Assembly (NCBI GenBank): GCA_011109175.1
Contig: RDEW01000016.1
Span: forward strand, 1,051,653-1,115,652
Source of the DNA: Dicyema japonicum
Taxonomy: Eukaryota; Animalia; Dicyemida
Reading direction: 5' to 3'
DNA: 64,000 nucleotides
The notes beneath the pieces were generated by a model. The model worked only from the letters and a program-made list of their open reading frames with translations, was not told the DNA's origin and ran no database searches. A program made the translations under genes and the position numbers. Numbering within the stretch: the first letter of the stretch is position 1; every line of letters starts with the position of its first letter. Below, in pieces: positions 5,560 through 40,285 of the stretch.

Positions 5560-5865
5560 TTTAAAGCCTTTTTACGAGAGCCATAATATTTATAGCTCCG
5601 CATAGGCAGGACACACACTTTATTTAAGTAAAGAACAGTTAATCTTAACTAATAGTAGAACGTAAAACCAACTTCTTTTTCTTGTGTGAGTGTCCTTTCT
5701 AGACAATCCAGTTCCGCAGTGAGTATCCACTGATGACGGCGTCACTCGTCAAACCCTTTCTGCATCGTAGATGCGTGGAACCTTCCACCAGGTGAACAGC
5801 AGCGAGATTCGAACACGTAGCCTAAGCCACTTAAGCCCGACACCTAACCACCATGCCACCCGGCT
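5560..5865 (-). mobile_element. tRNA-derived SINE, full-length copy A, with 11-bp target-site duplication
   Basis: Minus-strand head gccgggTGGCATGGTGGttagg...GTTCGAATCtcgc (A and B boxes); homologous to 30366-30670; flanked by direct repeat aaatggcattt at 5549-5559 and 5866-5876. Confidence 0.85.
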
Positions 5866-5949
5866 AAATGGCATTTATAATAGTTAAAAATAAAATTTTT
5901 CTTTATCAAAGTTTATTTAATATAAAACTTTTTATTAAGGAAAGAAAAG

Positions 5950-6362
5950 AGAGTAAACGGTTATATAGCGGCAGACTGCGTGGCTATTTCCTCTCAGAAT
6001 GGCGAGCGAGATTCGCACAAATAACCAGCAGCGCTCACGAGGGTTTATCTAATGCTGCAGCTTTGCACAGTTTTGTTATTTTTATACACAAATAAAAAAA
6101 TTATTTGGCCGATTTATGAATTTTACGATAGTTACATTATTCATTTTTAAATGGCATTTTTTGAAAAAGATGTGGAGTCCGAACCATATGGTAGGACTCA
6201 GATGTAATGCTCTCCAGATAACTTTTTAACTCTTGTTTATAAATCGTTAATTTTTCTTCTTAGAGTAAACGGTTATATAGCGGCTGCCTGACTGCGTGGC
6301 TATTCCCTCTCAGGATAGCGAGCGAGATTCGTTCAAATATCCATCAGCGCTCACGAGGGTCT
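5950..6362. repeat. Pair of about 100-bp GC-rich direct repeats (about 5950-6045 and 6262-6362)
   Basis: agagtaaacggttatatagcggc...gactgcgtggctatt...agcgctcacgagggt present twice with scattered differences. Confidence 0.85.
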
Positions 6363-6519
6363 CCCATTCGTAATTTTTTTGCCATAGATTCCATTTTAGC
6401 TCCCATTTTTAGAAATTTTAGTTGTCATAAAAAATACCCTGATTATAACATTTAAATTTTCTCCCGGATTTGTCATTTCAATATGGTTTTAAAAAGGAGA
6501 GGTCTACTTCGACCAGCTG

Positions 6520-6625
6520 CATTGACTAACTTTATACGATATGGTTTTTCTCACAGGCCGGGACACATGAATAATGCACTTTGCTCCATAGACGTCCACA
6601 AAGTTTTCGACTCCTTTAGAAGTTA
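6520..6625 (+). pseudogene. Small reverse-transcriptase remnant (Ingi/Vingi-like)
   Basis: Translates to AALTNFIRYGFSHRPGHMNNALCSIDVHKVFDSF, aligning by eye with LTKLTQFVTDGLN...ALDIEKAFDSV at about 48100-48190. Confidence 0.4.
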
Positions 6626-7499
6626 TTCTTTTTAGAAGATCTCAAAGAATCTTTTGGGTGATTTTTGACATGCAAATGTCATATTCGCATAATCTTTTAA
6701 AACTCTTACCTAAAATTATTCTCTAAATCACCTCATTCCCTATTGAAAAATCATATTTTGATTGATGAACATTCATTTTTTGTTCATCCGGTTATATGTT
6801 GTTCGACAAGGTGATTGTTGTGGTAGGGACATTTAAGACTGCGCCAAAAAATGAGAAGAGGTTACCTTGTGAATCCAAGAACGGTAAAGCAATGAATTCG
6901 ACTGCCCGATTTTGTGCATGTCATCTTTTAATCTAAGCTGGCAGTCACAACGAAGGTACACAAAATAAACAATCAAAGTAGAAAAGTTTTAAAATTATCA
7001 ATGCTGGTGGTGACGTCCCATAATCGTGTTGATATTAATAAAAAATTTAATCGTGGTTTCAGTTTCTGGAGAAGTTCTAGAAATAAGACTTTTTTCACTG
7101 AGGTAGGTTATGATTATTTTTCAGTTGTGGAATGCCAGAGTCTGTGGGCTGTATGGTCCCGTTTTACAAAAATTTGTAGTCTAAGCATCACGAAATGGTC
7201 TCAGATTTATGATTTTCAGTGTAGGTGGTAAGTTAGAGATTTCAAGGTTGAACAAGTATCCTCCTCACTATGACATATCTATATCACAGTTCATTTCCTC
7301 AAACCAAATATTATCTCTCATCTCCCTTCTCAATGAACTCATGAAAAATCGAAAACCCATAAGTTTTTGAAATAAAGAAACATAGGTCGAACCAATGCCT
7401 GAGTTCGAATCCAGACATGCCCAAATTGGAAGACGAGAGAACCTTCTAATTTGAATTGGAACAAGGGAATTTATTAGTTATTAATTCTAATGTAAAGTC

Positions 7500-8960
7500 A
7501 GAATTAAACTATTTAAAATTGATTGGCTGTATTAATTTATTCTCTTTCGTTTTGAGCCATTCCTTAGCTCAACTGCATCTTGGTCACCAATCTGATCTTC
7601 ACTCCAGCATTGTTGTTTCATGGACACAATTCCGTCATCCTCAACTTGTAGATACTTTCGTTGCAGGAAATGAATGACCTCACTAACATCACTCTCTTGA
7701 AAGTTCATCCCATGTCGGTGCTCCACTAACATGCTTTCAAGAGTTTTCTTTAACACAATAGATTGAATGTATGCCCTCGGAATTATATCCAAATCATCCA
7801 TATGTGACTTGTAGAACTTACAATTCCCTCCCAAAACAATAGGAATAATTTTAACTTTCGCATTGTATATTTGAGACAACTCTCAAGCAAGGAGGTCGTA
7901 TTTATGAAGTCTACCTCAACCACCTACAGCATCTCCTGATAAGTGACTCCAACCTCTACTAAAGTAATCTCACTTGTCCTTTATCAAAAACAAATATGTC
8001 CGACTTGTCATGCTGTACTTTGATATCCGTCATTAGCGTCGTATCGACACGGATCTCAACATTCTCAGTTGTTACTATTGATTGACTGAGTGAGTCTTTA
8101 ATTTCTTTGAATATGTGATTCCATATTTACGACACAAGTTTAAATGAAGACATCTCACCACCTTATTGTGACGTCGTATGTAATCACTATTTAACATCCT
8201 ATTGCATCTCGTTGCCAAATGATCGACTGTTTTTGGCAGATTTACAATGATTGCAATTCGATCCTTTTTCTTCAAAGAACAAATTTCGGTCTTGTAAAAG
8301 GCAATACAAGGCTTCGGCTCTTGGACTATTATTCCCTTTTGCTAGCCATCCCGAAGATGATGCAATGTCAACAGTCGGGTCTTTTAAACATTTGAATAAC
8401 ATAGAATGAAGAAATTTACTGTTAATTTTCATCAATTTACTGCATTCAATTTTGTGCTTGCCAAACCCTCAATTCTTTTTCTAACTTTATCGGCAATCTT
8501 TTATAAAATTTCTTGTTTTAGAGTGTTATTTCATTTATCCTCCAACACTCCAAGGCCTCAATTCTTTTTCTAACTTTATCGGCAATCTTTTATAAAATTT
8601 CTTGTTTTAGAGTGTTATTTCATTTATCCTCCAACACTCCAAGGTATCGATGACCTTCAGTTCCATTCAAATATTTTGCTTCCTTTGATAAACATTCAAC
8701 ATTATTAGCCGACTTAATGTTCTTATTGAGGACTTATTCCTTAGCACCCTGACATATTTTTCTCGTTCCTAGTTGGTTATCTGAGATTATTTGGAATGTG
8801 TCAACAAAATCACTTAGTTTCTTTTTGACACAATTTGTTATCAATTTATATAAGTTCGGCATGCATGTAATTGGTCGTAAATCTTTGGGTGCATCAAAAT
8901 TTTCCTTTTTGGTAAAAGATACGTTATCCCAGCATAAAACCAATCCCCTGGAATACATTT
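7500..8960 (-). mobile_element. Decayed R4/Dong-like non-LTR retrotransposon (RT fragment, CCHC knuckle, REL endonuclease)
   Basis: Fragments DLRPITCMPNLYKL, CNHCK...DHLATRC...RHNKVV and IIPIVLGG match the element at 19253-22680; frameshifted and internally deleted; contains a perfect 89-bp tandem duplication (8467-8555, 8556-8644). Confidence 0.85.
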
Positions 8961-9509
8961 TCTATTAATAACATCGACAATCACCTTTTGAAAAAACTCA
9001 TGCAATGCATCAAATTTCTATAAATAATTTTCATATTCCTCGCTTAAATTTAAAAAATTAAAAAAAAATAAAAAAATAAAAAAATAAATGGAATATTATT
9101 TTTTAGCCATTAATTTTATTTTTTTAATAATCGATATCGAGAAAGCTTCTGTAATTTATATTGAATAATTATTTAATAATCAAAGAAAATAAGGTTTTTA
9201 CTTTTGTAGCCAACATAATTAGTTGTAAAGTAATTGAAGATGGTTGAGGTGGGGTTGTTTTTTATTTTCTCTTATTATGTTTTCAATTATGTGGCTTGCG
9301 TGAAAAACTTAAGAGCCCTTTCCTTATGAAACTTCCAGGTTAGAACCTCTAGCGTCGTTTCTGTACAGAAAATGATCCCAACTCATGACTCTTCAACCCG
9401 TCTATCAGCGACTTAACCATTTTCAGGAATCCAAAAGTGTTTACTTAAGAACGGTCATGATAACGATGCCCTTATAACTAACATAATAAAATATTAAACA
9501 ATAAACAAA

Positions 9510-9720
9510 AAGTCACCTACTTCCATGTCCAATCTCTCCTTTGATGTCAACAAAAGTCTGTACCACAGCTTCTTTCACCTGGCTTGTCAGGAATTCTTTC
9601 AATGATATCAAAGATAAAATTGACAGGCGCTGATTTGACATTGAAAACCTCAAATACGTTGTATCTGCTTTAACTTTGAAAAAGAACGTTCACAACTAGC
9701 AATTGAGTAGCCAACTGTGA
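9510..9720 (-). pseudogene. hAT transposase C-terminal dimerization-domain remnant
   Basis: Minus strand reads SIASCERSFSKLKQI...MSNQRLSILSLISL, the hAT dimerization signature (ERSFSKLK...MSQERL); frameshifted. Confidence 0.7.
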
Positions 9721-9779
9721 TCCCTAGCAGTCGATCTTGTCTATGATAAAAGTGAGTATAGCTTAATAACGTGAACTCT

Positions 9780-9960
9780 ATGTTTTGGATCAACCCAAGT
9801 CAAAGTGGATTCAGACCTGGAAGGTCGCCGGCAGACGATGTAGGGAGCCACATATAGATGTGTGCAATGTGCCAGAAACACAAGGAAAATCTCAATCCTT
9901 TGAATTGACCTATCTCGTGCTTTCGACACTATCAATCGCAAAAAGCTAATACACATAATG
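9780..9960 (+). pseudogene. RTE-like RT remnant
   Basis: PSQSGFRPGRS...IDLSRAFDTINRKKLIHIMESILDE, related to but distinct from the adjacent RTE copy. Confidence 0.7.
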
Positions 9961-11893
9961 GAAAGTATTCTAGACGAAAAATTGGATCACCACCCGAACG
10001 TGCCAGATATGGCACAGCATTGCAGAGAGTTACGGCTAAAAGCGGCAAACACTTCAGACGAGAGTAAAAAAAGAGCTTAATATCCAACAAAGGGAACTAA
10101 AATGGAAAATCAAAAGGATAACAGAAAACACTCAAGGGAAATTATTACATCCCTATTAAAAGATGTGGAATGCTAAAGGACAATTCAAGGATGTTTGCGG
10201 CTGCTGCGGACAAAGAAAGGACAAAACACCCTTCACATCAAAGACAAAGATGGAAAATTCGTGGGTAACCCGGAAGAAAAAGCAGAATTGATTGCACGAC
10301 ACTTCGAAACACTGTTGAATAAAAAAAATAAGGACTTCCCCCTTTCCAGGGAGAAGCAAAGGCACTAAAAATCCCAATCACAGTGAAAAAGGTAAAATTA
10401 GCGCTAAATAAACTGAAGAACAACAAGAGTGCTGGTCGGACTACATAAGCCCTGAGCTCCTAAAATATGGGCCAAAAAAACTAATCGACACAATTGCAAA
10501 AACCCTAAATGACATCTTTGAAATTAATACCGATCTAGGACTTGGAAATGGATTATTAATATCCATACAAAAACCGAACAAATCAAAAAGACCAGCAAAA
10601 AATCTCCGCCCGATAATATTTTTGAATTCGATACGCAAGGTGTTGGCAAACATTGCACTAAGCCGGATAAAGGGTGTGGCAAATCTATACCTACCAGCAA
10701 GTCAAAGTGGGTTCCGAGAAGGGAGGTTTACGACAGACATTGAATGGAGCAACAGATGGCGCTGCGAAACGCACCAAAGATTCAAGAGCGCAACGAACGT
10801 GTTGGGAATAGATCTCTCCAGAGCTTTCGACTCAATAAACAGACAGAAACTGATGAATGTGCTTGAGCAAATATCGGATCGGTTAGGGTAATCAGACTAC
10901 TACTTGCGAACACAAGACTATCTGTGAGGACAGAAGGAGCAATTTCCCGCAGTTTCAAAACAACGATTGGAACACCCCAGGGTGATTCCCTCTTCCCTTT
11001 ACTATTCACCATATACCTTGAATCTGCACTCCGCGACCTCCGTAAATGCTATATAGGAGACATAGAAGAGACATCTTATGCGGATGATGTGGATTTCGTA
11101 TCACGGGACGTGACAGCGCTCCAACACCTACTAGAAAATGCACCTGCGAAGCTTGAGAAATGGTTTCTCAGCGTAAATGTTAACAAAACTGAAATTACGG
11201 AAATCAAAAGGGAAGACGATATTACTCATGAAAGATGGAGACGTACTAATAAGCTCGGCTCTCTACTAGGAGACGCTGGAGATGTACTAAGGAGGAAAAC
11301 ACTGGCAAATGCGGCAATGGCTAAACTGAAGAAAGGATGGCTAAGGGCCAAAGGACTTGGAATTGACATCAGATGCAGGCTTTACAACGCGTTTGTGAAA
11401 CCGATCCTACTGTACAACGCTGGGACATGGGGAAATTCCTTCAACGAACTATTGAAACTGGATTCGTTCCATAGAAGGCAACTAAGAAGCTTACTCGGAG
11501 TGGAGTGGCCACGTAGAATATCAACCACTGGTATTTACAACAAGTGTATGTGTTCTTCATAAGCAAGGATGTGATAGATGTCCGGTGGAGACTATTTGGG
11601 CATGTACTAAGAATGAATCCGGACGCACCCGCTAACAAAGCGATGGAAGATTACTTTGACAGTTGGGACAAACCCTTCCGCGGACGACCTAGATCGACAC
11701 TTCCGACTGCCTTAAACAAAAATTTAAATTGTGTGAGAAAAAATCTAAAGACGGGAGACGACCTGGACGAATTGAGATCACTCGATTCGACAGAGGAAGA
11801 TGGAAAAGAGTAACTATAAATAATGTTTCTTTGAGTGTTGCACATGCGGGGCATATAAACATCGTGGCTTTCGTGAAAGTGCTTAATAATAAT
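9960..11893 (+). mobile_element. RTE-clade LINE, 5'-truncated copy A, ending in a (TAA)n tail
   Basis: RT motifs QSGFREGR, DLSRAFDSI, GTPQGDSL, YADD; RTE C-terminus RWRLFGHVLRM...GRPRSTL; ends taataataat at 11884-11893; several frameshifts. Confidence 0.92.
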
Positions 11894-11899
11894 ACCGTC

Positions 11900-12545
11900 C
11901 CCGTGGGAAATCACAATCGACAGGATTTAAAACCGACATCGGCCCACCACAGTGAGATTAGTTATCCCCGGTCCTATTCATAATACCTGGCGATTACCTC
12001 ATTCAAAAAAATATGGGCGAACTGGATACGGCGAAGGTACATAGGCACTCGCCTTCAATTCGGTTGTACAACTCTTTCAGCGAACCAATTTTGTTCTACA
12101 ACGCGGGAACCTGGAGCCTAACCACCAAAGAACTGGAAAAGCTCAACTCTTTCCACATAAAACAACTATGACTTCTCCTGGGCATCTAATGTTCGAAACG
12201 AATGACCAACGACGATCTCTACAGAATCACTCAAACATCACAGATTGGGAATAAAGTGACTTGGGCAAAATGGCAGCTTTGGACAGCTTCGGAAATAGAA
12301 CCAGCCAATCAGACCATGGAATCATTACTTCTCTATATTACACAAAACAACGTATCGAGGTCGACAAAGAACTCTTGCATAGGAAGAAAACAAATCTGGA
12401 GAGGATCTGGATGATCTGAGGGCGGTTGTGAGAAACAGGGGGAGGATGGAAACGACTTACAGCGCGTATCCTGAGATGTATGGCAAAAGTGGAACCTCAA
12501 ATTAATTAACTTTTCTGTTTCCGCGGACATTGCTATTAATAATAA
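11900..12545 (+). mobile_element. Decayed RTE-like 3' fragment (second family)
   Basis: RLYNSFSEPILFYNAGTWSLTTKELEKLNSFH; ends attaataataat at about 12535-12546. Confidence 0.7.
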
Positions 12546-12959
12546 TGTCTTTGATCAGATGCCCCATACAACGTGCTGCCCTATGACCCCCTCTAGGGAC
12601 TATTGAGAAAATTTAATTATAATTAAAGTTAATATATTTTGTATTTTTAAATTAAGTTAAAACATATTAAACCAAATTTCCATAGTAAAAATAATCAGTT
12701 ATAAACCGGAATTAATGAAAACAATAAGCTTGAATACAATTGACGATAATGCTTATGCTCTCACCAAAACTGGGTTTCTTGGGAATAAAAGGGACACAAT
12801 GCTTATAAACGAGGTCATTAGAAAAGTACCAGTTATATAATATTCGAGGACAAACTTGGTCAAGGATTTATAAGAGGACATGCTATTCCGGAAGATGCGG
12901 TTTACGGAATACCCCCAATGACTCAAAAATTTCATGTTTCTGATGGTCTACGAAATATT

Positions 12960-25689: not shown

Positions 25690-28600
25690 TTAAGATGTGA
25701 CTGACTATTGTTACAACCACTGAAAGAGAACTATCCCTATCGGCAATGGAGAGACTTTATAAGGCTTCTGAATCTCTTCTTACTCATAAATTTACATTAT
25801 TATTCAACTCACAATGTCGGGTCCAACCCCAGGACGTGTCCAAAAAGTCTCCAACGAGAATTAATGATCTCGAGACTTATTGGTGTACAGTCACACATAT
25901 TGTACAGTCCTTTCCGCGAAATCTGGGATGCCCAGGACATTCCAGTTTTGGTTCTTAGATGATTCCTGTGAAACGAGTCTAGTCTCTCCAATTCCTCATT
26001 TGAGATGGTCCAGGTTCCAGAGTTGTATAGGAGGATTGGTTTGATAAAGGTGTCGTATAACATTATCCTTTGTTTTATGTTATTCCCTTTCCATTTTAGC
26101 CATAGGTTTTATCAGTCTGTATAATGCCGCATTTGCCATGGTTTTTCTCCGTATGATATCTTCACTGTCTCTTAATAGGGAGCCAAGTTTCTTTGTGTGT
26201 CTCCATTTCTCTTAGAGTGAGTTATTCATTCGTCTTATTTCTGTCCGTTCTGTTTTTCCCTGTTCACGGTGAGAAAACATTTCTCAAGTATATCTGGTGC
26301 TTTTTCTAGTACATATTCCAGGAGTTCTTTGTCCTCAGAGATTAGGTCGACATCATCAGCATAAATCACTTCTATTTTTCCTTGGTATAATGGTCTCAGT
26401 TCCCTCATAGAGGCCTCCAAGTATATTGTGAATAGTAGCGGAGATAATGAGTCTCCTTAAGGAGTGCCTGTGTATGTTTCAAATTTTCTTGAGTTAAACA
26501 TCAAAAATCAATTTTAGAAAAATAATCAGTTAATTTATCCCCAGTTATCCTTTTACTTCTTACATTTTTCATAAAATTAAGTCGAAAATCGTAAAATTCT
26601 TTGAGCATTTCAGGAGATATGTAAAAAATTTTCTTCTCTAACTGATCAAGAGAATCTTGCGTTTCTCTTAGAATTGTTTCCATGTTATTGTTTTCTAAAC
26701 CTTCGTTGTAAATATTATCAACGAATTCGTCACTTTCCCCATTCAATGTTTCGTTTACGGCATTGTTGATCATTTCTTCTGTAATGGTATCTTCAATTTT
26801 TACGGAATCACGAATCTTTTCAATTTGATTCCAACAATTAAATATTAAACTTGGATCAAGTTTTTCCCAGCTTTTAGAAATTAGCAGAATTACATGACGA
26901 AGGTTTATTTTGTTTATCAACCGTTTGAATTCATCATCCTCCTCATAACACAAATACTGAATCAGATAATTTGAGTAATAATCTTTAAATGTCTTGATAA
27001 TTCCCATATCCAATGGTTGCAAATACGGTTTTGTATTTTTTGGCAAAAATAAAAACTCAATATTTGAGCATTCAATAGTTTTATGACATCCCGCATTATC
27101 AAGCAATATTAATACTTTTCTGTTGATTGTATAAAATCTTTCATTTATCCGAGTCAACCAGCTCATAAAAATATTTCCAGTCATCCATGCATTTTTAGAG
27201 GATGAATATGAAATTCCAAAATCTTTCACATTGAAATTTTTGAGACATCGAGGGTTTTTAAATTTTCCAACAATCAATGGCTCAAGTTTTTCCCCCATGG
27301 AATTGCAACAAAAAAGTACAGTGACTCTTTCTTTTCCCTGTTTAAAGCCAAAAGTATCGTCATTTATTCCGACAAACGACTTTCGTGGAGTCCTTTTTAT
27401 ATAAAGAGCAGTTTCATCACAATTAAAAACATTTTGTCTTCCATATTGAATAATTTTCTCGTCAAGAATTTTAAAAAACTCATTGATGTAAGTCAATTCA
27501 CATGAATTTTTTTCTCCACAAATTGATTTAAATTTCAGTTCATGTCGTTTTTTAAATCTGTCAAGCCAGCCGTTTGAAGCTTTGAAAGTATCAAATCCAA
27601 TTTTTGAAGCCGTATATAAGGCAATTTTCTTTATGAAAGGACCTGATATTGGAACCTTATCTTCGCGTAGTTTCTGAAATATTTCAAAAACTTGATCATC
27701 GAATTTAGATTTCTCACAATAAGGCATAGTATGTAAATAAACGTGTAAATAAACGTGTAAATTAAAAATTATAATTTTATTTACTTATAATTTCATTCCC
27801 CACAATTTTATAGTGCCCCAAAATTTCCATATTTTTTATCGATTTTCCATTTTACTCTGCCAAAATGTTGGCCAAAAAAAATGCCCCAAAATGCGGGGGT
27901 GCCCCACCCCTGGGGTCTGCCCCAATTCGGGGTCGGACTGTATTCCCAGAATGTAGGTGGCATTGCAATATCTTTGATGTGTTGCACATCTCATCTATGA
28001 CTCCAGACTGCATCAGCTGTTGATCTTCCTTCTCTGAATCCAATTTGACTTTCGAGTAGGTAGTCATAGGCGGGTTCTTTTATTCGTTCTAATACAATGT
28101 TAGCTAAGACCTTCCATAGAGAATTTGATAATATAATCTGTCGTAAGTTTTCAACCGGCCCTTTGAGTTTATTGGGTTTTTGTATAAGTATTAGTGATCC
28201 CGTTCCCAGGGGTAAAGTTGAGTTAGTTGAAAACATTTCATTTAATAGTGTAGCGATTTTTTCAAAAAGGAGGTAAGGGCTGTATTTCAGTTATTATGGG
28301 TTTATCGTATCTGGTCCGGGGCTTCTGTTATTTTTTAGTTTTTGACATGCTGTTTTTACTTCCAAAATTGTAATTGGTTCTTTCAAGGGTCTTGGCTTTC
28401 TTTTGAATGGAGGGATTGCTGTAGTCACATTGAAAAGTTTCTCAAAATATGTTGCAATTGCCTCTGCTTGCTCTTCAGTATTCTGTATTGTCTTGCCATT
28501 TTTGAAATTCTTACTGTTGGGTCCTTCAGATGAGAGCAGATGTATTTTTGGTAATTTTTGACTGTGTCTGGATGAGAGATCAGTTTTCCCGTTGCGTATC

Positions 28601-30350: not shown

Positions 30351-30365
30351 AATACATAGTTTTTA

Positions 30366-30670
30366 GCCGGGTGGCATAGATGTTAGGTGTCTGGATAAAG
30401 TAACTTAGGGTACAGGTTCGATTCTCGCTGCTGTTCACCTGGTGGAAGTTTTTACACATCTACGATGCTAAAAGGGATTGACGAGTGACGCCGGCATCAG
30501 TGGATACTCACTGCGGAACTGGATTGTCTAGAAAGGACCCACACACAAGAAAAAGAAATAAAGATCATTCCTTGGTTCTACGATTAAAAAAATTAACTGT
30601 TCTTTACTTAAATAAAGTGTGTGTCCTGCCTATGCGGAGCTATAGATATTATGACTCTCGTGAAAAGGCT
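30366..30670 (+). mobile_element. tRNA-derived SINE, copy B
   Basis: gccgggtggcatagatgttagg...ggttcgattctcgc head; body and tail homologous to 5560-5865. Confidence 0.85.
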
Positions 30671-30799
30671 GTTAAAAAACCATGAGTCACAGAGATATTG
30701 CTAATATGGCTAAGTGCAGTTTTTTGTTGACCATTAGTCACATTAAAAATAAATTATAAAAAATTTCAATGTTGCTAGAAAGCTGGAGTTGTTGCGGGA

Positions 30800-31095
30800 A
30801 TGTGAAATTCAATTCACCACACCAGGCTATGCATGTGCTGCATGGGATCTAACCTGTCGGCAACGAACCTAACAAAAATTCAAGAGATCCAGTCAAGAGC
30901 AAAAAAATTACTAGAAAAATATACAGATAAAGAAATTGCCCCCAGAGAACTCGAGTCTATCATAGAGGCAACTGGAGGCAATTTCAGAAGAGGAAAGGAA
31001 AAGACCCCCGTCCGTATAGATAATGCGTGGATCACTGTCGGAGCATCGAGAAAAAAATGGCCCGATTATTGAGAGATGCCGGGATCACCTGAATA
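30800..31095 (+). pseudogene. Ingi/Vingi-like 3' fragment
   Basis: SNLSATNLTKIQEIQSRAKKL; ends gatgccgggatcacctga, like gacaccgggatcacttaa at 49243-49260. Confidence 0.6.
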
Positions 31096-31264
31096 TTAGT
31101 TATTGGTTAAGACGGTGTTTCTTTGGCTTAAATAATAATAATAAATGACAGTCAGAAGATACGTAATCCAAGAGTCATTGAAGCCATCATTGGTTCAAAC
31201 ATCTCCAAAATCACATTTTAAAGATAAAATAAAAAAATAAAAATTTCGACCTCTTCTATCTAAA

Positions 31265-31392
31265 AGAAAAAAAGGAAGTGAAGATCATTCCTTGGTTCTA
31301 CGATTAGTTAAAATTAACTGTTCTTTACTTAAATAAAGTGTGTGTCCTGCCTATGCGGAGCTATAAATATTATGGCTCTCGTGAAAAGGCTG
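31265..31392 (+). mobile_element. 5'-truncated SINE, copy C (3' part only)
   Basis: aagatcattccttggttctacg...gcctatgcggagctataaatattatggctctcgtgaaaaggc matches the 3' half of copies A and B. Confidence 0.85.
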
Positions 31393-31569
31393 GTACATTA
31401 GAAAATATTGAAAATATAAATCGTATTTGGTGTAATAATTTGAGGAGACATATGATGTATCCGTTATAACAGACCCCATCGACTAATACAAACTCATTGT
31501 TTTTTCCCTGTTTAATTAGTAACGAGTTTTTATGTTAATAAAAAATATCTGTCTGTCTTGCTTGGGATT

Positions 31570-32450
31570 CAACGTTTTGAATTTCCCAAGTCATCAGCGG
31601 ACGAAGACGGTAGAGTGTGCATTGGGAAACATTCATTCTGTCTCCTGTTTATTTCCAAATGGAGTACCCAGGGCTCGCCGCTATCAACATTACTATTTAA
31701 CCTATTTACGGCTGACATCCGACGCCGAATCTTAATGACATTCTGACATTTCGAATCTTATACAAGAGAACAGGAACTGAGCCAATATCATGTGATATTA
31801 CTGATTCAAGATGAAGGCTCTTTGGACACATACTCCGCCACGATACAGGGACCTCTGCCAACATAGCAATGGAGGAGTATTTTGTGTTAGAGGCTTTTCG
31901 TTTCCGCGGCGGCCGAGGACAACAATGCCGGTAATTCTAGATGAAAATCTCAGGATTGGAAAGTGCTCTAAAGATGGGGATGATCTAGATATGCTACTGA
32001 ACATGGCAACGGATCGAAAAAGATGGGCGACGTTAATTAGATTGTTAACTTTTCGTGTTGCACATGCTTTGTCATGATCTTGGCATCGCACGTGCCTATA
32101 ATAATAATTCCGACGCCGAATGGAGAAGACGACCTGCTTCTGACTTATGCAGACGATATCGTTTTAGCCTCACGGATCAGAACACCTAAACAGCGACGGA
32201 AAGAATACAACACCACATGGATCGACTATCGAGTGATTTAATGAAAATCGGATGTCAATCAATACCGAAAAATCTGTTACAACTCACTATACCTCGGACA
32301 AAAGATTGTCTAACAGGACAATAGAAGTTACTACGAAGGGAAGAGAATTGCCGTTCAGCAAATGGCAAAAAATATTGGGTCTGACTTTCGATATGAACTT
32401 TTCGAGACACGTTTTCGAGACACGAGAGTTATAGTGTAGTTCTCTTGCTG
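31570..32450 (+). pseudogene. Ingi/Vingi-like RT fragment split by an RTE insertion
   Basis: PNGVPQGSPLSTLLFNLFTADI before the insertion; LLTYADDIV and KILGLTFD after it. Confidence 0.75.
31731..32108 (+). mobile_element. 5'-truncated RTE insertion with 13-bp target-site duplication (TSD)
   Basis: TSD tccgacgccgaat at 31718-31730 and 32109-32121; RTE C-terminal peptide; ends ctataataataat. Confidence 0.9.
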
Positions 32451-33299: not shown

Positions 33300-34775
33300 T
33301 CATTGACATCGCCAACAACTAGTTAGTTGATGGTATCTTGTCAACCCCGTCTTCACTAACTGTCTTTCTGTTTCTACAGTTTCAGGCTTTTCCTTAGTAG
33401 TTTCGACCATTTCCGCATCATCAGTTTCATCGATTTTATTGTCTTTAGACTTTTCATTTTTTTCAGTTTCTACATTTTGGAGAATTCCCATATCTTCAGA
33501 GATTACATTTTCTGCTTCTCCAGTTTCAGAGTCTTTCTCGTCTTGAGACTTTTACAACTTCTGCTTCTCCAGTTTCAACCTTTTCTTCTTTTCAGAGTCT
33601 TTCCCGTCTTCAGACTTTTCAACCTTATCTTCTCTAGTTTCAGAGTCTTTCCCGTCTTCAGACTTTTCAACCTTATCTTCTCCAGTTTCAGAGTCTTTTC
33701 TGTCTTCAGACTTTTCAACTTATCTTCTCCAGTTTCAGAGTCTTTCCCGTCTGCAGACTTTTCAACCTTATCTTCTCCAGTTTCAGAGTCTTTTCTGTCT
33801 TCAGACTTTTCAACATTTTCCGTTTGAGAGATTTTAATCTTTTCAGTATCTTTGTGTTCAGGGTTTAAATTTTCTTCAATAATATCAGTAAAATTGATTT
33901 CATGAGTATCATCCTTGATTTTTGAGGGACTCATTGGGATGTCTTTCACTGACTTTGTAGGACTTGATATGGCTTCTCTATCAACTGGTTTAGGAACCTG
34001 TGAGGCGGGTCCTTTAAATATAAATAAAAATGAACTCACTTGTTTTTTCCTGTTTACCATGTCTAAACTAAACCCAACAAACTATACATTTTCCGAATTC
34101 CCATGATTAGACCGTACAGAGCATCCAAAACTTGGTTCATCGACGAGTCAATTATTGAACTAATAAAAACATAGTCAGTCAGACTGGGGGAATGATTGGT
34201 GGTGAACTTTACCCTGAAATCGTCAAGAGAGAGTTCTAAGTAAATCAAATCCCAAACGAGGATTAAGATCTTTCTTTGTGGCAATAATCAAGAATGGGAC
34301 ATTTTTAAGTGCAAGATTTTCAGCCAGTTTATTGAGCTCTGTAAGGGACTCTACATATCTTCTTTCATCGGAAGCATCCACCACATAGCACACGGCGGAC
34401 GGATCCTTCAGTTGATGGCACGAAAGATTTCTAAATTTAATATCACCCGGATTGTCCTATAATCAACAAAATGGGTACCCAAATATTGAGGGGTATCCCC
34501 TTGTATTTCATGTCGTAAATTATGATACTGTTATTGGGGGCGACATTGGCGTAGTCCGATATGTTTGCAAGTCTTCTAATCAAAACTACAAAATAGGGAT
34601 AAAAATGGAAATTAATCAAAAATTCTATAAATTAAACAAGAAAATATTCATTGCATAACCAAGAAAATATTCATAACATATTTTATCGACAGAATTGTTT
34701 ACCTGATTTTCCAGAACCATCCAGGCCAAGAAATACTATCCTTTGCTTTGTCTTTTTCGATCCTGCTGCGCCCAT
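33300..34775 (-). CDS. Divergent Arf/Arl-family GTPase with long acidic tandem-repeat C-terminal tail; multi-exon
   Basis: MGAAGS (myristoylation-type start), IVFLGLDGSGKS P-loop, IWDNPG, YVVDASD, IIATKKD; 25- and 28-nt introns link it in frame to the repeat region; indels inside the repeats break the assembled frame. Confidence 0.75.
33500..33830 (-). repeat. Coding 48-bp minisatellite (16-aa unit KVEKSEDGKDSETGED), about 5 full units plus degenerate ones
   Basis: Plus-strand unit cttctccagtttcagagtcttt(c/t)c(c/t)gtcttcagacttttcaaccttat repeated; one unit lacks a C at about 33719. Confidence 0.9.
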
Positions 34776-35959
34776 TATGAAATGAATATTTAATTTTATA
34801 ATTTGAATAAATACAATAAATTTTAATATTTTTTTATTTAATTTTATTTAATATGAAATAAAATTAAAATTTAACGAAATGACAACCAGTTAGCTTGCTA
34901 ATAATTAGTTTGATGGTTTGACGTAGCCCATGCACTAAGACATAGCTTTAGTACATTTAATGTCTTCATATCCTCAATGTGGATGCTACCTTTTGAACTC
35001 GGGAGATATCGTATGCACTAATATCTCGGTTCGAATTTTTCTGGAGGAACTTTGACAAGTGCCTTGCTGAGGAATGAGGAAATTACTAATCCCCGAATGT
35101 TCTTAGTAATAATTAGTGTCCGATGTTTCTTCATTTCAAAACATTACTTCTCTGAATCTCCCGCGGCCAAGAAAGTGAACCAGAAGTTATATCCACCTGA
35201 TGATGTCATTAAATGTACTAGATTAGTGAATCACAATTAAATTGATAACTTGTCGAATTAAATTATAATTACATGTTTACATGTTTAAACTTGAATATTC
35301 ACAGACTGACTACTCACGCGATTGCGTCACGCTTCTCTCTCGAACGCACACAGGCTTGTGTTGGTCGTATACCGGATTCTTTAGTCACCCTCGGTTCTTA
35401 GGGATTATGGATTCCAGAGACGTTAGAAAAGAAACACAAGTCAATAGTAACTTTGAATACTCTTTTCTGACCAGCCTTGATCATCATGACATTTGTGAAT
35501 GGACCCTATAAAACATGACTCATTGTACTGCTTGTAGATAGTTTCTAAAGGGACATTTCAGTAAGTCGGTCTTTTTTTAATTTTGTAACCACATTTTCAT
35601 GTGCATGTAAAAAACCACCCCTATTATCATTTGAGATCTGCTGAAGTAGCTTTTAATTAATCTGTCTTCCAAGATTTTGTCTGGTGTAAAAAAGAGTTGT
35701 GGCAAATTTTTCAGGACTAGTCGACAGGCGGTTCAATACAAAAAGATAAAGGTGATCCTGAGGAACACCATTAGGAAAAAGTCGGAAAATAGATTTTGAC
35801 TGTCATATAGAAACACGTTCCCTTGCATGTTGACGGGATTAAACAATTATTTAATCAACCAAACAATTGTTTAATCATCCATATCAATTTATTGATAATT
35901 TTGGTTATCCTCAAAAATTGATTAATCAGAAAACAATCATTTTATGGGTGTCGTGAGTC

Positions 35960-37260
35960 CGTATAACACGTACCCTTTTATTGCTTTGAATGAATTCCAA
36001 GAACACAATAATAGCAAACTAACAACTCATGCAATCTCGAAACGCAATGACAGAAATTTTATCCGTTACTCGTTTTTTGTCTATTAGCCATTTCAGTCCT
36101 AATAAATACTTCAGTATAATGAGTCCAGCCTCTTTTCTTCAATCTTTGAAATTCTCCATGTATCCGAATTATGGAAGAGGATGGCTTTTACAAAGGGGCC
36201 ATTCAGTCTGAGACGAAAAGAGAGAAACAGAATGTTTCCTTGTCCATTTGGTGATCCATTTGGTGGTGTTTTTCGGAATCCCAAGAGAATCAAGTTTCCT
36301 GATATTTCTCAATTTTTTGTTTTTACTCCATCCGTTTGATGTAAACAAACTATGTCTTTGCAGTGTTTATGGATAGTCCCACTTGCCCAGTTGGTAAGGT
36401 GATATCTCAGTTTCCGAATGCATCCTTGAGATGATGCCCATGTCTCATCATATTTTCGATACAGACCCCAGTCACTTTTTGTAGAAAAGCGTCTATCAAA
36501 ATGACCGAATCTCTGTGCATAAAACTTTAGAGACTTGGATCAGTTTTTTGCGACGTGCAGTGACTAAAGTTTTAGATCTACAAAAATAGTTATGTTACAT
36601 CGAAACAGTACCATCTATGGGACAACAATATACTGACCGTGGAGCTCAAAACCACTTTGATATTCATTAGGTTTTTGGATCGGGTTAAGAACGATTAAAG
36701 CAAGGGTCTTTTGTAGGACGTTCAATAAAATTAGAGTTTTCAACCGATCTGACAAGGTTTATCCTACTGAATTTGTATCAGTAATTTTTTCCATGTTAGT
36801 CATTATTTAAAATCATGCCAGTCAACAGAATTACTGTTCCGATGAAAGTTCTATTAACCTTGTTCTTGTTACTCTGAGATAACATTATCACGTCTTGGAG
36901 AATCAGTCTTTGGCTTTATTATTGCTCTGGAGACCTCCTCTGATTAAATTTTGTATTTAATTATATTAGCCTCCTATCGTGTAAAATCCCACTTTTATTC
37001 TCTCGTAGACGTTCAAAGTGAGATGCTACGGCCTTTGCCTGTTCGGCAGGATTTCCCATTGCTCTTGCATCTGGATCCTGGGAGACAAGTACCTATGGTC
37101 TGTTTTTCCTACGCATCAATCGCATAAACTCTTTTTGAGTAAAGTAACAGAGAGACCACCATAAGTTGCCAAAAAGATATCTACCTTTAATGCGACATAT
37201 AATTAAAGTCTTTCTCAGGGTTCTTGCAGTCCTACGTCGGCAGTAAGTCTAGCTTGTTTT
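35960..37260 (-). pseudogene. Highly decayed RTE-like element
   Basis: Fragments MGNPAEQAKAVASHFERL, EYQSGF and FVKAILFHNSDTW align with the RTE copies at 9960 and 38604. Confidence 0.65.
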
Positions 37261-37359
37261 TAATGAAAAATGTCGGAATTTATTTTTGCAGAAATACAAG
37301 TCAAATTCCCTGTAAAGGTACATAAAATTGTGCAAAATAAGCCTTTTTCGACATTTGTC

Positions 37360-37540
37360 TCTTATTTATTTAATAACCCCGGATATCCCGAAAAGAGGTA
37401 AGAGCTAACGTTTAATTAAGGTATATCCAATTCCAAAGGTCGGAATGGGACACATACTTTAATCATCACGGACATCAAAACTGTGGAATCCCATCACTGG
37501 AGCAGGAAAGGTAGGGATTCTTGGACCGTCCAGATATAAG
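37360..37540 (-). repeat. Second, diverged copy of the structured SINE-like repeat
   Basis: ccccggatat...atatccaattcca...gtggaatcc...ctggag parallels 15821-15965. Confidence 0.6.
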
Positions 37541-37707
37541 GCGTCTTCTGAGTTAAATGGATACATGAGGTCTCTAAAGACTTTAGTCTCTTCAGGGCAG
37601 CAGACTGAACCCTGATATTTGCCCAAGTCAAGTAACTTAAAAAGTTGAATTAATAATAAAATTGGATTATAATTTTAAAATGAAAATTCTATTTAAAAAT
37701 TCAAATC

Positions 37708-38348
37708 ATGGGAGTTTCCTGGTGAGTTTTTAATAATATACAGTGTTTCGGCTTTAACGGGGGAAGAATATAACAGCAGAAAGTCGTATGACAGCTTAAT
37801 CGAAAGTTTAAAAAAACTGCCAAGTCTCTCAGTCAAATCAACTATTGTAGGAGAGTTGGTAAATTATTATCCCAAAAATCCAGAAAGTTTACTAACTTTA
37901 TTATTCCACAGAGCCCCACGTGATGCTGCTCGAACATTCTGAATATTCAAATTTGTGCTTTGTTAAGACATTTTTTCCAAATTCGATCTTCGCTGTTCCG
38001 GTTGGTAAGGATTTCCGGAAAATCCTCAACGTAATTGCGGATCCTACGGCATCAAACCGCCACGGAAAGCAGGATATTGTTAGAATAAACGGAACCGTGT
38101 TTTCTGTCGAGGATTTTACCGTCGAGGTCGATTATGTTTCACTTCAGGATTCCTTTAAAGGGATATTAGTCCGTGTGACATACGAACCCTCCGAGAACTT
38201 GGACCACTCAATGTCTCTGTTACGGGAATTTGTCGAGGACTCACTGAATATTGTCCCCGAGGCCTATGACTTTTGCAATGGCCTTCAAATCGGCTTTTTA
38301 ATGGATAAGTATATTGAGAAAGTCGTATTTCTTCGTTGTTATTTGTGA
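37708..38348 (+). CDS. MED20: Mediator complex subunit 20; three exons
   Basis: MGVSCV start, LEHSEYS, GTVFSVEDFTVEV..FKGILVRVTYEP; introns 37722-37743 (22 nt) and 37887-37911 (25 nt) give one open frame. Confidence 0.8.
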
Positions 38349-38603
38349 TAGTTTTTTAGAATATTATTTCTAAATTTGTTCTTAGTGTTTGAATAGTAGT
38401 TGCTAGTCTAAGGAATTGTCTTATTCGTTTGGTGAGAGAGTATACAAAAATTCGGAAATTTGTTTTGAGACAAAGAATTATTCTTACAACTGGGAGGTCA
38501 GTCGGACAGGGTCTACTAACCAGGAGACTTGAATTCGGCTTGGAAACATAAAGTATTCGCTTATTTTTGTCTACTGATTAAGAGTAAATTGTTATTTTGT
38601 GGT

Positions 38604-40285
38604 TTTAGTGAGCATTTTCTAGTAGGTGTTGGAGTGCGGTCACATCCCGTGATACGAAATCCACATAATCCGCATAAGATGTCTCTTCTATTTCTCCTAT
38701 ATAGCATTTACGGAGGTCGCGGAGTGCAGATTCAAGGTATATGGTGAATAGTAAAGGGAAGAGGGAATCACCATGGGGTGTCCCAATCGTTGTTTTGAAA
38801 CTGCGGGAAGTTGCTCCTTCTGTCCTCACAGATAATCTTGTGTTCGCAAGTAGTAGTCTGATTATCCTAACCGACGATTCATCCAATATTTGCTCAAGCA
38901 CATTCATCAGTTTCTGTCTGTTTATTGAGTCGAAAACTCTGGAGATATCTATTCCCAACACGGTCGTTGCGCTCTTGAATCTTTGGTGCGTTGCGCAGCG
39001 CCATCTGTGGCTCCATACAATGTCTGCCGTAGACCTCCCTTCTCGGAACCCACTTTGACTTGCTGGTAGGATCCACCACACCCTTTATCCGGCTTAGTGC
39101 AATGTTTGCCAGCACCTTGCGTATCGAATTCAGATATATTATCGGGCGGAGATTTTCTACTGGTCCTTTTGATTTGTTCGATTTTTTATGGGTATTAATA
39201 ATCCATTTCCAAGTCCTATATCGGTATTAGATTCAAAGATGACATTTAGGGTTTTTACAATTGTGTCGATAAGTTTTTTTGTCTCATATCTTATGTTGTC
39301 CGGCCCAGCACTCTTGTTGTTCTTTAGTTTATTTAGCGCTAATTTTACCTTTTTCACTGTGATTGGGATTTTTAGCGCCTTTGCTTCTCCCTGGAAAAGG
39401 AAAGTCCTTATTTTTTTATTAAACAGTGTTTCGAAATGTCGTGCAATCAATTCTGCTTTTTTTTCCGGGTTACCCACGATTTTTTCATCTTCGTTTTTGA
39501 TGTGAAGGGTGTTTTGTCCTTTCACCTGCGAAGCTTGAGAAATGGTTTCTCAGCGTAAATGTAAACAAAACTGAAATTACGGAAATCAAAAGAGAAGGTG
39601 ATATTACTCACGAAAGATGGAGACATACTAATAAGCTCGGCTCTCTACTAGGAGACGCTGAAGATGTACTAAGGAGGAAAACTCTGGCAAATGCGGCAAT
39701 TGCTAAACTGAAAAAATAATGGCTAAGAGCCAAAGGATTTGGAATTGACATCAGATGCAGGCTTTACAACGCGTTTGTGAAACCGATCTACTGTACAACG
39801 CTGGGACATGGGGAAGTTCCTTCAACGAACTATTGAAACTGGATTCGTTCCATAGAAGGCAACTAAGAAGCTTACTCGGAATGGACTGGCCACGTAGAAT
39901 ATCAACCACTGGTATCTACAACAAGTGTATGTGTTCTTCATAAGCAAAAATGTGATAGATTCCCGGTGGAGGCTATTTGGGCATGTACTAAGAATGAACC
40001 CGTACGCACCCGCTAACAAAGCGATGGAAGATTACTTTGACAGTTGCGACAAACCCTTCCGTGAACGACCTAGATCGACACTTCCGACTGCCTTAAACAA
40101 AGACTAAATCGTATGAGAAAAAATCTAAAGACGGGGGACGACCTGGACGAATTGAGATCACTCGCATTCGACAGAGGAAGATGGAAAAGACTAACTATAA
40201 ATATTGTTTCTTTGAGTGTTGCACATGCGGGGCTATAAACATTATGGCTTTCGTAAAAGTGCCTTAATAATAATTTAGTAAGCAT
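38604..40285. mobile_element. RTE LINE copy B with inverted 5' segment (about 38612-39523 antisense, 39523-40273 sense)
   Basis: Both parts are highly similar to copy A; TSD tttagt(g/a)agcat at 38604-38615 and 40274-40285; (TAA)n tail. Confidence 0.92.

What the first reader, a model, noticed from the sequence alone, without database searches (positions are those of the whole stretch)
5560..40263. tRNA-SINE and its partner RTE LINE in one window, sharing a covarying 3' stem-loop
Seen: the SINE tail (31353-31390, also 5566-5605 minus and about 30632-30670) matches the RTE 3' end (40225-40262, also 11844-11882) at 32 of 38 ungapped positions. The closing stem is gcct/aggc in the SINE but gcac/gtgc in the LINE, i.e. 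two compensatory pair changes; a third RTE end (32057-32098) keeps gcac/gtgc. Established: stringent-type SINEs borrow the 3' stem-loop recognised by the partner LINE RT. Inference: an apparently unnamed SINE family mobilised by this RTE, with a selected RNA structure.
Basis: partly seen in the sequence, partly recalled or inferred. Interest (0 to 1): 0.75.

Follow-up and report, generated by a model that had tools for sequence, protein, structure and literature searches.

The report
SINE borrowing an RTE LINE tail
A very abundant short jumping element in this small animal genome carries the same 3' RNA hairpin as a resident RTE-type LINE, kept intact by matched base changes. It is a real but ordinary example of a well-known way that SINEs hijack LINE enzymes.

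Summary
The window SINE tail matches the window LINE 3' end at 32 of 38 ungapped positions. The closing helix is GCCU/AGGC in the SINE and GCAC/GUGC in the LINEs.

- **SINE:** about 315 bp, with A/B-box head, 7-14 bp target-site duplications and at least 2,265 first-look genome hits.
- **LINE:** 3.06 kb with one endonuclease+RT reading frame and at least 723 hits. Copies are 97-99% alike and end in (TAA)n. Its endonuclease relatives are annotated 'craniofacial development protein 2-like', so it is RTE-like.
- **Shared hairpin:** both tails fold into the same 16-bp hairpin. No SINE/LINE difference breaks a pair (simulated P about 0.001-0.003). Adding two more tails raises the pairs with matched double changes to 6 of 16.
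- **Shared insertion sites:** both families insert about 10 nt downstream of a T-rich stretch, the published RTE signature.
- **New details:** the LINE reading frame ends inside the hairpin, so its 5' arm is coding. The terminal repeats are family-specific: SINE (ATT)n or (A)n, LINE (AAT)n.

Caveats: the head is not recognised as a tRNA by Rfam. At least four RTE lineages share the hairpin, so the exact driver is open. Repbase, Dfam and SINEBase could not be checked.

The scan has already noted this SINE/RTE pair on other windows of this genome, probably Dicyema japonicum. It is a new member of a known kind.

The parts
5560..5865 (-). Full-length SINE copy 1 with a short A tail. It is flanked by an 11-bp target-site duplication AAATGCCATTT at 5866-5876 and 5549-5559.
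   Evidence: It differs from the family consensus by 5.0%.
5566..5607 (-). 3' hairpin of SINE copy 1. The closing helix is GCCU (5607-5604) paired with AGGC (5569-5566).
   Evidence: covariance-model score 81.2 bits.
30365..30679 (+). Full-length SINE copy 2, ending ...GGCTGTT(A)6. Its hairpin is at 30628-30669.
   Evidence: repeat pairs I3 and I9; 71.4 bits.
31263..31393 (+). 5'-truncated SINE copy 3, keeping only the last ~130 bp. Its hairpin is at 31349-31390.
   Evidence: repeat family D11; 77.8 bits.
39523..40275 (+). Collinear 3' segment of RTE-like LINE copy A. The reading frame ends ...SVAHAGL with stop TAA at 40236-40238. The hairpin is at 40221-40262 (GCAC 40221-40224 paired with GUGC 40259-40262). 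A (TAA)n tail runs to ~40275.
   Evidence: tblastn q365-603; 72.6 bits.
38611..39522 (-). 5' segment of the same LINE insertion, in inverted orientation (RT residues 54-365 read on the minus strand).
   Evidence: (repeat pairs I1, I2, I5-I8).
10067..11894 (+). RTE-like LINE copy B, 5'-truncated and collinear. Its hairpin is at 11840-11882 and its (TAA)n tail at 11883-11894.
   Evidence: repeat families D2, D3, D14, D16; 57.1 bits.
31754..32108 (+). Discrete ~355-bp element made of an RTE C-terminal coding remnant, a hairpin at 32060-32095 (GCAC/GUGC closing helix, different inner stem) and (TAA)n. It comes from a second RTE lineage.
   Evidence: (277 candidates; nearly all of the 39 other scored copies begin at query positions 110-117, mostly 115).

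Best explanation
This is a SINE/LINE partner pair of the 'stringent' type.

The SINE is a ~315-bp non-coding retroposon. Its head carries RNA polymerase III box-A and box-B motifs. It has a conserved core that other SINE families in this genome share, and its last ~55 nt derive from an RTE-clade LINE 3' end.

The resident RTE-like LINE is 3.06 kb with one APE+RT reading frame. It makes the endonuclease and reverse transcriptase. The inferred mechanism is that this protein binds a 16-bp hairpin at the very 3' end of its own RNA, nicks DNA about one helical turn downstream of a T-rich stretch, and primes reverse transcription on the terminal microsatellite. The SINE RNA presents the same hairpin and is copied in trans.

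Shown here: the shared tail, the shared fold, compensatory changes, target-site duplications, a shared target-site signature, and the youth and abundance of both families.

Inferred, not shown: Pol III transcription of the SINE, binding of the hairpin by the RT, and which of the several RTE lineages supplies the enzyme.

In the LINEs the 5' arm of the hairpin is the last seven codons (…AHA…) and the stop codon sits at the top of the stem. The SINE is free of that coding constraint. Its closing helix has changed at two pairs on both sides (GCAC/GUGC to GCCU/AGGC), which argues that the pairing of this helix is what is selected, not its sequence.
For: **Family status**
- The SINE query finds 2,265 first-look candidates in the 67.5-Mb genome. 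The best 40 are 90-94% identical to the window copy over full length.
- 30 aligned copies average 2.1% from their consensus. 21 of 30 have a detectable 7-14 bp duplication of the target site, mostly abutting the 5' end.

**The LINE**
- It has 723 candidates.
- Full length is ~3,060 bp, and 11 long copies are 96-99% identical pairwise.
- Many copies are 5'-truncated at different points.
- Pfam finds RVT_1 (E 4e-33) and Exo_endo_phos.
- RT relatives are ~1,000-aa APE+RT proteins on ~3.0-3.5 kb contigs.
- All named APE relatives are 'craniofacial development protein 2-like'.

**The tail**
- Window identity is 32/38. The consensus alignment scores 49 against shuffles at 17.8 +/- 2.5.

**The structure**
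- Both consensus tails give the same minimum-energy fold: -18.6 kcal/mol (z -4.3) for the SINE and -14.7 kcal/mol (z -2.5) for the LINE.
- On 69 tails, 94.4% of cells are paired, against 30-58% when partners are slid.
- The two consensus tails differ at 11 positions. Six of these lie in helices and none breaks a pair.
- Random placement of 11 substitutions keeps all 16 pairs in 0.08-0.26% of trials.
- With the tail of an RTE lineage whose RT is 66% identical (L028:1403-1454) and a second SINE family (L064:903-954) added, 6 of 16 pairs show changes on both sides and 96.4% of cells are paired.
- RNAalifold on an independent MAFFT alignment of 8 representative tails predicts the same 16 pairs, 6 with double changes.

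**Shared integration machinery**
- T is enriched at positions -12 to -8 before the duplication. For the SINE it is 58/103 against 102/302 elsewhere (p 7e-5). For the LINE it is 39/70 against 80/210 (p 0.012).
- This is the signature reported for RTE LINEs and their SINEs, and the duplication lengths fit the stated RTE range of 7-15 bp (PMC6007223).
Against: - The terminal repeats differ and never cross over. Genome-wide, the SINE tail is followed by ATTATT 247 times, by A6 43 times and by AATAAT 0 times. The LINE tail is followed by AATAAT 120 times and by ATTATT 0 times. This weakens a simple 'identical 3' end' model. However, T-rich SINE repeats paired with A-rich RTE repeats, and two tail types in one genome, are documented for accepted RTE/SINE pairs (PMC6007223 table 2).
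- The SINE tail is about equally distant from the main LINE (9 of 42 hairpin positions differ) and from another RTE lineage (L016:1926, 7 differences plus a gap) (read by eye). No LINE with the SINE's GCCU/AGGC helix was found in the 332 kb held.
- None of the 11 long LINE copies examined has an intact full-length reading frame.
- The covariation rests on few independent events: two in the closing helix and four in the inner helix. Two of the added tails are single genomic copies.
- The target-site samples are small (21 SINE, 14 LINE).
Confidence: 0.8

Rival explanations
1. The pair is real in kind, but the enzyme donor is a different RTE lineage than the LINE in this window. It could be the lineage seen at L016:1926-1976, or a lost one whose tail carried GCCU/AGGC and (ATT)n.
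For: At least four RTE lineages with the same hairpin plan coexist: L028:1403, L016:1926, L013/window 32060 and L047. The L016 tail shares the SINE's GCUCUCGUG 3' arm. The SINE's terminal repeat is never the LINE's.
Against: The main LINE is the most abundant and youngest RT source seen: at least 723 candidates and 96-99% pairwise identity. Every RTE tail found has GCAC/GUGC and (TAA)n-type repeats, so none fits the SINE better in those two features.
Confidence: 0.25
2. The A-tailed SINE copies (about 15% of exact-tail copies) are mobilised by a poly(A)-dependent LINE such as an L1- or Jockey-like element, not by the RTE.
For: 43 exact tails end in A6 or longer. An AATAAA lies ~45 nt before the 3' end. 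Earlier scan notes and the genome paper mention other LINE types in this genome.
Against: A-tailed copies show the same T-rich stretch at -12 to -8 (29 of 45 positions are T, counted by eye). Their duplications are 7-12 bp, like the (ATT)n copies. No base differences in the body visibly separate the two tail types among 30 copies (by eye). Coexisting A-rich and T-rich tails are known for RTE-driven AfroSINEs.
Confidence: 0.1
3. The hairpin is conserved for a reason other than RT recognition, for example RNA 3'-end stability or transcript termination. Alternatively, the SINE/LINE similarity is only recent common descent and the compensatory changes are chance.
For: No binding or mobilisation data exist. 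In the LINEs the 5' arm is also under protein-coding constraint (…AHA… is conserved in several lineages), which alone could conserve that arm.
Against: Coding constraint cannot explain the matching changes in the untranslated 3' arm or in the non-coding SINE. Chance retention of all pairs has a simulated P of 0.0008-0.0026. Stem-loop recognition by stringent-type LINE proteins is experimentally established for other LINEs (PMC4176376 abstract; PMC3747384).
Confidence: 0.08

Closest known systems
RTE-clade LINE / tRNA-promoter SINE pairs: Bov-B with Bov-tA, Anolis Bov-B with Sauria SINE, RTE1_LA with AfroSINEs, potato RTE with tobacco TS SINE (PMC3747384 table 1; PMC6007223)
   Same: A short pol III-type element carries the last ~50-100 nt of an RTE LINE. 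Both end in a microsatellite rather than in a poly(A) tail added to an unrelated end. Target-site duplications are ~7-15 bp. A T stretch lies about 10 nt upstream of the duplication. The SINE repeat may be T-rich while the LINE repeat is A-rich, and two tail types can coexist.
   Different: The host is a dicyemid-like genome, for which I found no SINE description in the open literature. The sequences are unrelated to those families as far as could be tested. The head is too degenerate to be assigned to a tRNA.
Eel UnaL2/UnaSINE1 and zebrafish ZfL2 stringent-type LINEs, where the 3' stem-loop is recognised by the ORF2 protein (PMC4176376; PMC3747384 section 1.4)
   Same: A conserved 3' stem-loop followed by short terminal repeats is shared by the LINE and its SINE. 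Compensatory changes keep the stem.
   Different: Those LINEs belong to the L2 clade and have a long 3' UTR. Here the LINE is RTE-like, with almost no 3' UTR, so half of the hairpin is coding and the stop codon lies in it. Function is experimentally shown there and only inferred here.
RTE-derived non-autonomous elements without a tRNA head, such as Bov-A2, MAR4, RTESINE1 and RTE1-N1_LA (PMC3747384 table 1)
   Same: The 355-bp element at window 31754-32108 consists of RTE sequence with the RTE hairpin and repeat. It has a fixed 5' end and hundreds of copies.
   Different: Those families carry the RTE 5' end as a promoter. Whether this element does was not tested.

Membership tests
SINE (non-autonomous, LINE-tailed retroposon) | Short, non-coding and highly repeated, with discrete ends | tested here: met
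   ~315 bp with 2,265 first-look candidates. The best 40 copies are full length with a common 5' end (AGCCGGG...) and a common 3' end (...AAGGCTTT plus repeat).
SINE (non-autonomous, LINE-tailed retroposon) | Inserted by target-primed reverse transcription, shown by target-site duplications | tested here: met
   21 of 30 copies have a 7-14 bp direct duplication flanking the element.
SINE (non-autonomous, LINE-tailed retroposon) | Internal RNA polymerase III promoter (box A and box B) | tested here: inconclusive
   TGGCATAGTGG and GGTTCGAATCT are read in the consensus head. They match the box A and box B consensus from my own knowledge. No transcription data are available.
SINE (non-autonomous, LINE-tailed retroposon) | 3' tail homologous to a LINE of the same genome | tested here: met
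   55-column consensus alignment at z of about 12 over shuffles. Window identity is 32/38.
tRNA-derived SINE head | Head recognisable as a tRNA (cloverleaf or tRNA model) | tested here: not met
   Rfam tRNA gives no hit at E<=1 on the window copy or at E<=10 on five consensus-like copies. The best hit is tRNA-Sec at 10.8 bits, E 9.2. ARAGORN finds nothing at default settings and calls a tRNA-Leu-like fold only at -ps80. A tRNA origin stays plausible but is not demonstrated.
RTE clade of non-LTR retrotransposons | Single reading frame with an APE endonuclease followed by RT, in an element of ~3.1-3.3 kb | tested here: met
   The element is 3,060 bp. Exo_endo_phos and RVT_1 lie on consecutive reading-frame pieces. 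Homologues are ~1,000-aa APE+RT proteins. No copy with an unbroken full frame was among the 11 examined.
RTE clade of non-LTR retrotransposons | Very short 3' UTR ending in AT-rich trinucleotide repeats, without a poly(A) tail | tested here: met
   The stop codon is ~24 nt before the repeat. (TAA)n is present in 31 of 31 sampled copies and 120 exact genome matches. That this is diagnostic for RTE comes from my own knowledge (Malik and Eickbush 1998).
RTE clade of non-LTR retrotransposons | RT/APE groups with reference RTE elements in a phylogeny | not testable with these tools
   No named RTE reference sequences were available. Indirect support: all named APE hits are 'craniofacial development protein 2-like'. 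From my own knowledge, that label traces to a bovine protein containing an RTE-1 endonuclease domain.
RTE clade of non-LTR retrotransposons | Insertion signature: a T stretch about 10 nt upstream of the target-site duplication, and duplications of 7-15 bp | tested here: met
   LINE: T in 39 of 70 positions at -12 to -8 against 80 of 210 elsewhere (p 0.012, n=14). SINE: 58/103 against 102/302 (p 7e-5, n=21). The signature is as defined in PMC6007223. The samples are small.
Stringent-type 3' stem-loop recognition element | A conserved hairpin directly before the terminal repeats, supported by covariation | tested here: met
Stringent-type 3' stem-loop recognition element | The hairpin is required for retrotransposition or is bound by the LINE protein | not testable with these tools
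   This needs a mobilisation or binding assay.

The most novel reading that the evidence does not exclude
The RTE recognition hairpin is dual-coded. In every RTE lineage seen, its 5' arm is the last codons of the RT (…AHA…) and the stop codon sits at the top of the stem. A terminating ribosome must therefore melt the very structure that the newly made protein then binds. This could be how these LINEs achieve cis-preference. The untranslated SINE would expose the hairpin constitutively and, being free of coding constraint, would show by its compensated closing helix that the protein reads shape and not sequence there.
Probability: 0.15. Interest if true: 0.55.

Novelty: new member of a known kind. 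Interest (0 to 1): 0.3.

Why it matters
The genome is 67.5 Mb with about half repeats, and matches the published Dicyema japonicum assembly. This pair helps explain a large share of its interspersed repeats. The genome paper attributed them only loosely to 'LINE-1 ORF2' copies (PMC6736024).

The pair also gives a clean natural example of compensatory evolution in an RTE 3' recognition hairpin. The SINE escapes the coding constraint that fixes one arm in the LINEs.

It extends the RTE insertion signature (a T stretch one helical turn upstream of the nick) to another animal lineage.

None of this changes current understanding of SINE/LINE biology.

Tried and rejected
- **Rfam on the SINE.** It found no tRNA and no ribozyme family. 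So the 'tRNA' label could not be confirmed, and an earlier scan note of an HDV-like fold in the SINE core found no Rfam support here.
- **SINE body against the LINE 5' end.** There was no similarity above shuffles (score 19 against 18.5 +/- 2.3). The core is therefore not taken from this LINE's 5' end.
- **Search for a LINE with the SINE's own closing helix or (ATT)n repeat.** None turned up in the 332 kb held. There were no genome-wide exact matches of the LINE tail followed by ATTATT.
- **Literature k-mer search for the core and tail and 'Dicyema SINE'.** Nothing relevant was found.
- It was redone from files only.
- I did not try to get round that limit and ran only a shorter pattern within the tool's stated length limit.
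- **Protein-name route to the RTE clade through papers.** This gave no citable source.

The contig is not human.
Full report
**What is in the window**

Three copies of one short repeat lie at 5560-5865 (minus strand), 30365-30679 and 31263-31393. The third copy is 5'-truncated.

Two copies of a LINE 3' region lie at about 10067-11894 and 38611-40275. In the second copy the 5' part (38611-39522) is inverted relative to the rest.

A third element ends at 32108.

Window 31353-31390 against 40225-40262 gives 32 of 38 identities. The other quoted coordinates hold the same two tail types. An 18-mer from the tail finds four sites against 0.11 expected by chance.

**Where the window comes from**

The window's assembly has 67,542,437 bases in 377 contigs. 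The window is 33-45% G+C.

The published Dicyema japonicum assembly is 67.5 Mb in 377 scaffolds, with 36.7% G+C and 48.9% repeats (PMC6736024).

I therefore take the genome to be that dicyemid. This is an inference from assembly statistics, not from sequence identity. It is not human.

**The SINE is a real, young, abundant family**

- The window copy finds 2,265 first-look candidates. The 40 that were scored are 90-94% identical over full length.
- Thirty aligned copies share a sharp 5' end (AGCCGGGTGG...) and a sharp 3' end (...GAAAAGGCTTT followed by a simple repeat). They average 2.1% from their consensus.
- Twenty-one of the 30 have a 7-14 bp duplication of the target site, usually abutting the element. 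For window copy 1 it is AAATGCCATTT.
- The head contains TGGCATAGTGG and GGTTCGAATCT. From my own knowledge these fit the box A and box B consensus.
- The head is not recognised as a tRNA. Rfam gives nothing at E<=1, and nothing better than 10.8 bits at E<=10. ARAGORN calls a tRNA-Leu-like fold only at a relaxed threshold. 'tRNA-derived' is therefore plausible but not demonstrated.

**The LINE is RTE-like**

- Its last 740 bases find 723 candidates.
- Copies are 5'-truncated at many different points.
- Full length is about 3,060 bp, and eleven long copies are 96-99% identical to one another.
- Reading-frame pieces carry Exo_endo_phos and RVT_1 domains.
- The RT part finds about 1,000-aa APE+RT proteins, encoded on contigs of 3.0-3.5 kb, at up to 46% identity over nearly full length. 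A shorter Octopus sinensis match reaches 55%.
- Every named relative of the endonuclease part is 'craniofacial development protein 2-like'. From my own knowledge, that label goes back to a bovine protein containing an RTE-1 endonuclease domain.
- All 31 sampled copies end in (TAA)n directly after the hairpin.
- The reading frame ends ...SVAHAGL, and its TAA stop lies inside the hairpin. In the window the stop is at 40236-40238.
- A reference phylogeny could not be made.

**Shared tail and shared fold**

The two consensus tails align over 55 columns with one 2-nt gap. The score is 49, against 17.8 +/- 2.5 for shuffles. Weaker similarity may extend another ~60 nt upstream.

Both consensus tails give the same minimum-energy structure:
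- a 4-bp closing helix;
- one unpaired A;
- a 12-bp inner helix with one bulged U;
- an apical loop of 3-5 nt (five in the SINE fold, three in the LINE fold);
- three unpaired A's on the 3' side;
- then UUU and the terminal repeat.

The energies are -18.6 and -14.7 kcal/mol, with z-scores of -4.3 and -2.5.

**Covariation**

On 69 tails (33 distinct sequences), 94.4% of cells are standard pairs. With slid partners the figure is 30-58%. Two pairs of the closing helix are C-G/U-A in the SINEs and A-U/C-G in the LINEs.

The two consensus tails differ at 11 aligned positions. Six are in helices, and all six keep pairing: two double changes, plus G-C to G-U and A-U to G-U. Placing 11 random substitutions keeps all 16 pairs in only 0.08-0.26% of trials.

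Variants that several copies share lie in the loop, or they turn the basal U-G pair into U-A.

A covariance model built from these tails found further tails in the 284 kb searched:
- One belongs to an RTE lineage whose RT is 66% identical (L028:1403-1454, frame ending ...CIAHALL). There GGG/UUC... has become UUU/AAG.
- One belongs to a second SINE family (L064:903-954).

With these two added, 6 of 16 pairs show changes on both sides and 96.4% of cells pair. That alignment is fitted to the model, so it leans towards the structure. However, RNAalifold on an independent MAFFT alignment of eight representative tails predicts the same 16 pairs with the same six double changes.

The number of independent events is small, about six. 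I regard the structure as well supported and its selection as likely.

**Why the closing helix differs**

In four of the five RTE lineages whose ends I could read, the 5' arm GCAC is part of the codons for Ala-His. The frames end SVAHAGL, CIAHALL, FAAHAGL and RVAHALS.... The fifth (L047) reads GCAA, Ala-Asn, at this place. The LINE arm is thus held by the protein as well as by the RNA.

The SINE is not translated. Both of its subfamilies seen here carry GCCU/AGGC.

One copy of a related SINE family has the 5' arm GCCU with the LINE-type 3' arm GUGC. The 19-mer of its 3' arm occurs only three times in the genome, each time with GUGC. This could be an uncompensated intermediate, but one copy proves nothing.

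**Terminal repeats**

Genome-wide exact counts:

| Tail | followed by ATTATT | followed by A6 | followed by AATAAT |
|---|---|---|---|
| SINE | 247 | 43 | 0 |
| LINE | 0 | not counted | 120 |

The repeat is therefore inherited with each family and not imposed by the enzyme. At first sight this argues against the partnership.

However, Nishiyama and Ohshima (PMC6007223) list accepted RTE/SINE pairs with exactly this contrast. Examples are Sauria SINE (ACCTTT)n against Bov-B (CGA)n, and AfroSINEs (GGTTT)n or (CAA)n against RTE1_LA (CAA)n. They also show two tail types coexisting in one genome.

**An independent test: the insertion site**

The same paper defines an RTE signature. The duplication starts about ten nucleotides downstream of a T stretch and is 7-15 bp long.

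| Family | Copies with a clear duplication | T at -12 to -8 | T at other flank positions | Fisher p |
|---|---|---|---|---|
| SINE | 21 | 58 of 103 | 102 of 302 | 7e-5 |
| LINE | 14 | 39 of 70 | 80 of 210 | 0.012 |

At position -10 alone, 15 of the 21 SINE copies have T.

A-tailed and (ATT)n-tailed SINE copies both show the enrichment. By my count the figures are 29 of 45 and 24 of 50.

The samples are small, and some short duplications in AT-rich DNA may be spurious. Still, the enrichment falls where it was predicted.

**Comparison with what is known**

SINEs that carry the 3' end of a partner LINE are long established. A 2013 survey counted 58 pairs, with the CR1 and RTE clades predominant, and noted stem-loops with compensatory changes in stringent-type tails (PMC3747384). 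Recognition of the 3' stem-loop by the LINE protein has been shown experimentally for zebrafish and eel L2-clade LINEs (PMC4176376 abstract; PMC3747384).

This finding is therefore a new member of a known kind.

I found no description of SINEs or RTE elements of dicyemids in the genome paper, its supplements, or the open literature. Repbase, Dfam and SINEBase could not be consulted.

The scan's own notes show that first readers flagged the same SINE/RTE pairing on several other windows of this genome.

**What remains open**

- Which RTE lineage drives the SINE.
- Whether any RTE copy is intact.
- Whether the SINE is transcribed by Pol III.
- Whether the protein binds the hairpin.
- Whether the stop codon inside the hairpin has a mechanistic role.

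After no more genome sequence could be fetched, so the older SINE subfamilies and the other RTE lineages are each represented by single copies.

Noticed in passing
Nearly all of the 39 other scored genome copies begin at query positions 110-117 (mostly 115; 277 candidates). This gives a discrete ~355-bp element made of an RTE C-terminal coding remnant (45-47% aa identity to the main LINE), a GCAC/GUGC hairpin and (TAA)n. It is possibly a separate non-autonomous family.
   Followed up: partly
window 38611-39522 joined to 39523-40262: The LINE insertion has its 5' 0.9 kb in inverted orientation relative to its 3' 0.74 kb, which resembles a twin-priming inversion. Copy B at 10067-11894 is collinear.
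   Followed up: partly
L029:1824-1896 (-), immediately upstream of the SINE at L029:1501-1820: A sequence scoring as a tRNA (Rfam 34.1 bits, E 6e-4; ARAGORN tRNA-Phe(aaa)) lies about 3 nt upstream of a SINE 5' end. It is a single case, and chance is not excluded.
   Followed up: no
P0121-P0123, P0078 (hits to L069:1902-3128:- and L062:3233-5041:+): The closest named relatives of the LINE endonuclease (49-53% aa) and one of the closest for the RT (55% aa) are from Octopus sinensis. According to PMC6736024 this is the host from which D. japonicum was collected. The identity is too low for recent transfer or contamination, but host-parasite exchange of RTE elements would be worth a tree.
   Followed up: no
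L064:640-975 (+); also L036:2720-2967 (+): Older SINE families share the central core (…GGTTCCACGCATC…GACGAGTGAC…GGAACTGGATTGTCTA…) at 73-78% identity but have different heads. The L064 copy ends in (ATT)n and pairs a SINE-type 5' arm (GCCU) with a LINE-type 3' arm (GUGC).
   Followed up: partly
L002, L003, L026 (5' junctions of SINE copies): Between the 5' copy of the target-site duplication and the SINE start there are 7-21 extra bases. In L002 these resemble a partial repeat of the SINE head. This suggests template jumps or untemplated addition at the end of reverse transcription.
   Followed up: no
window 53717-54560 (+); 25818-26492 (-); 27941-28503 (-); 12061-12324 (+): These are further diverged RTE-like RT fragments (41-60% aa identity to the main LINE). 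The one ending near 54540 has ...GCACA...UGUGC before a (TAAC)n repeat, so the closing-helix theme extends to a lineage with a different microsatellite.
   Followed up: no
window 33455-33854: A tandem array of ~48-nt units (7 registers reported) rich in TTTCAGAGTCTTTC motifs. It is unrelated to the SINE/LINE question.
   Followed up: no
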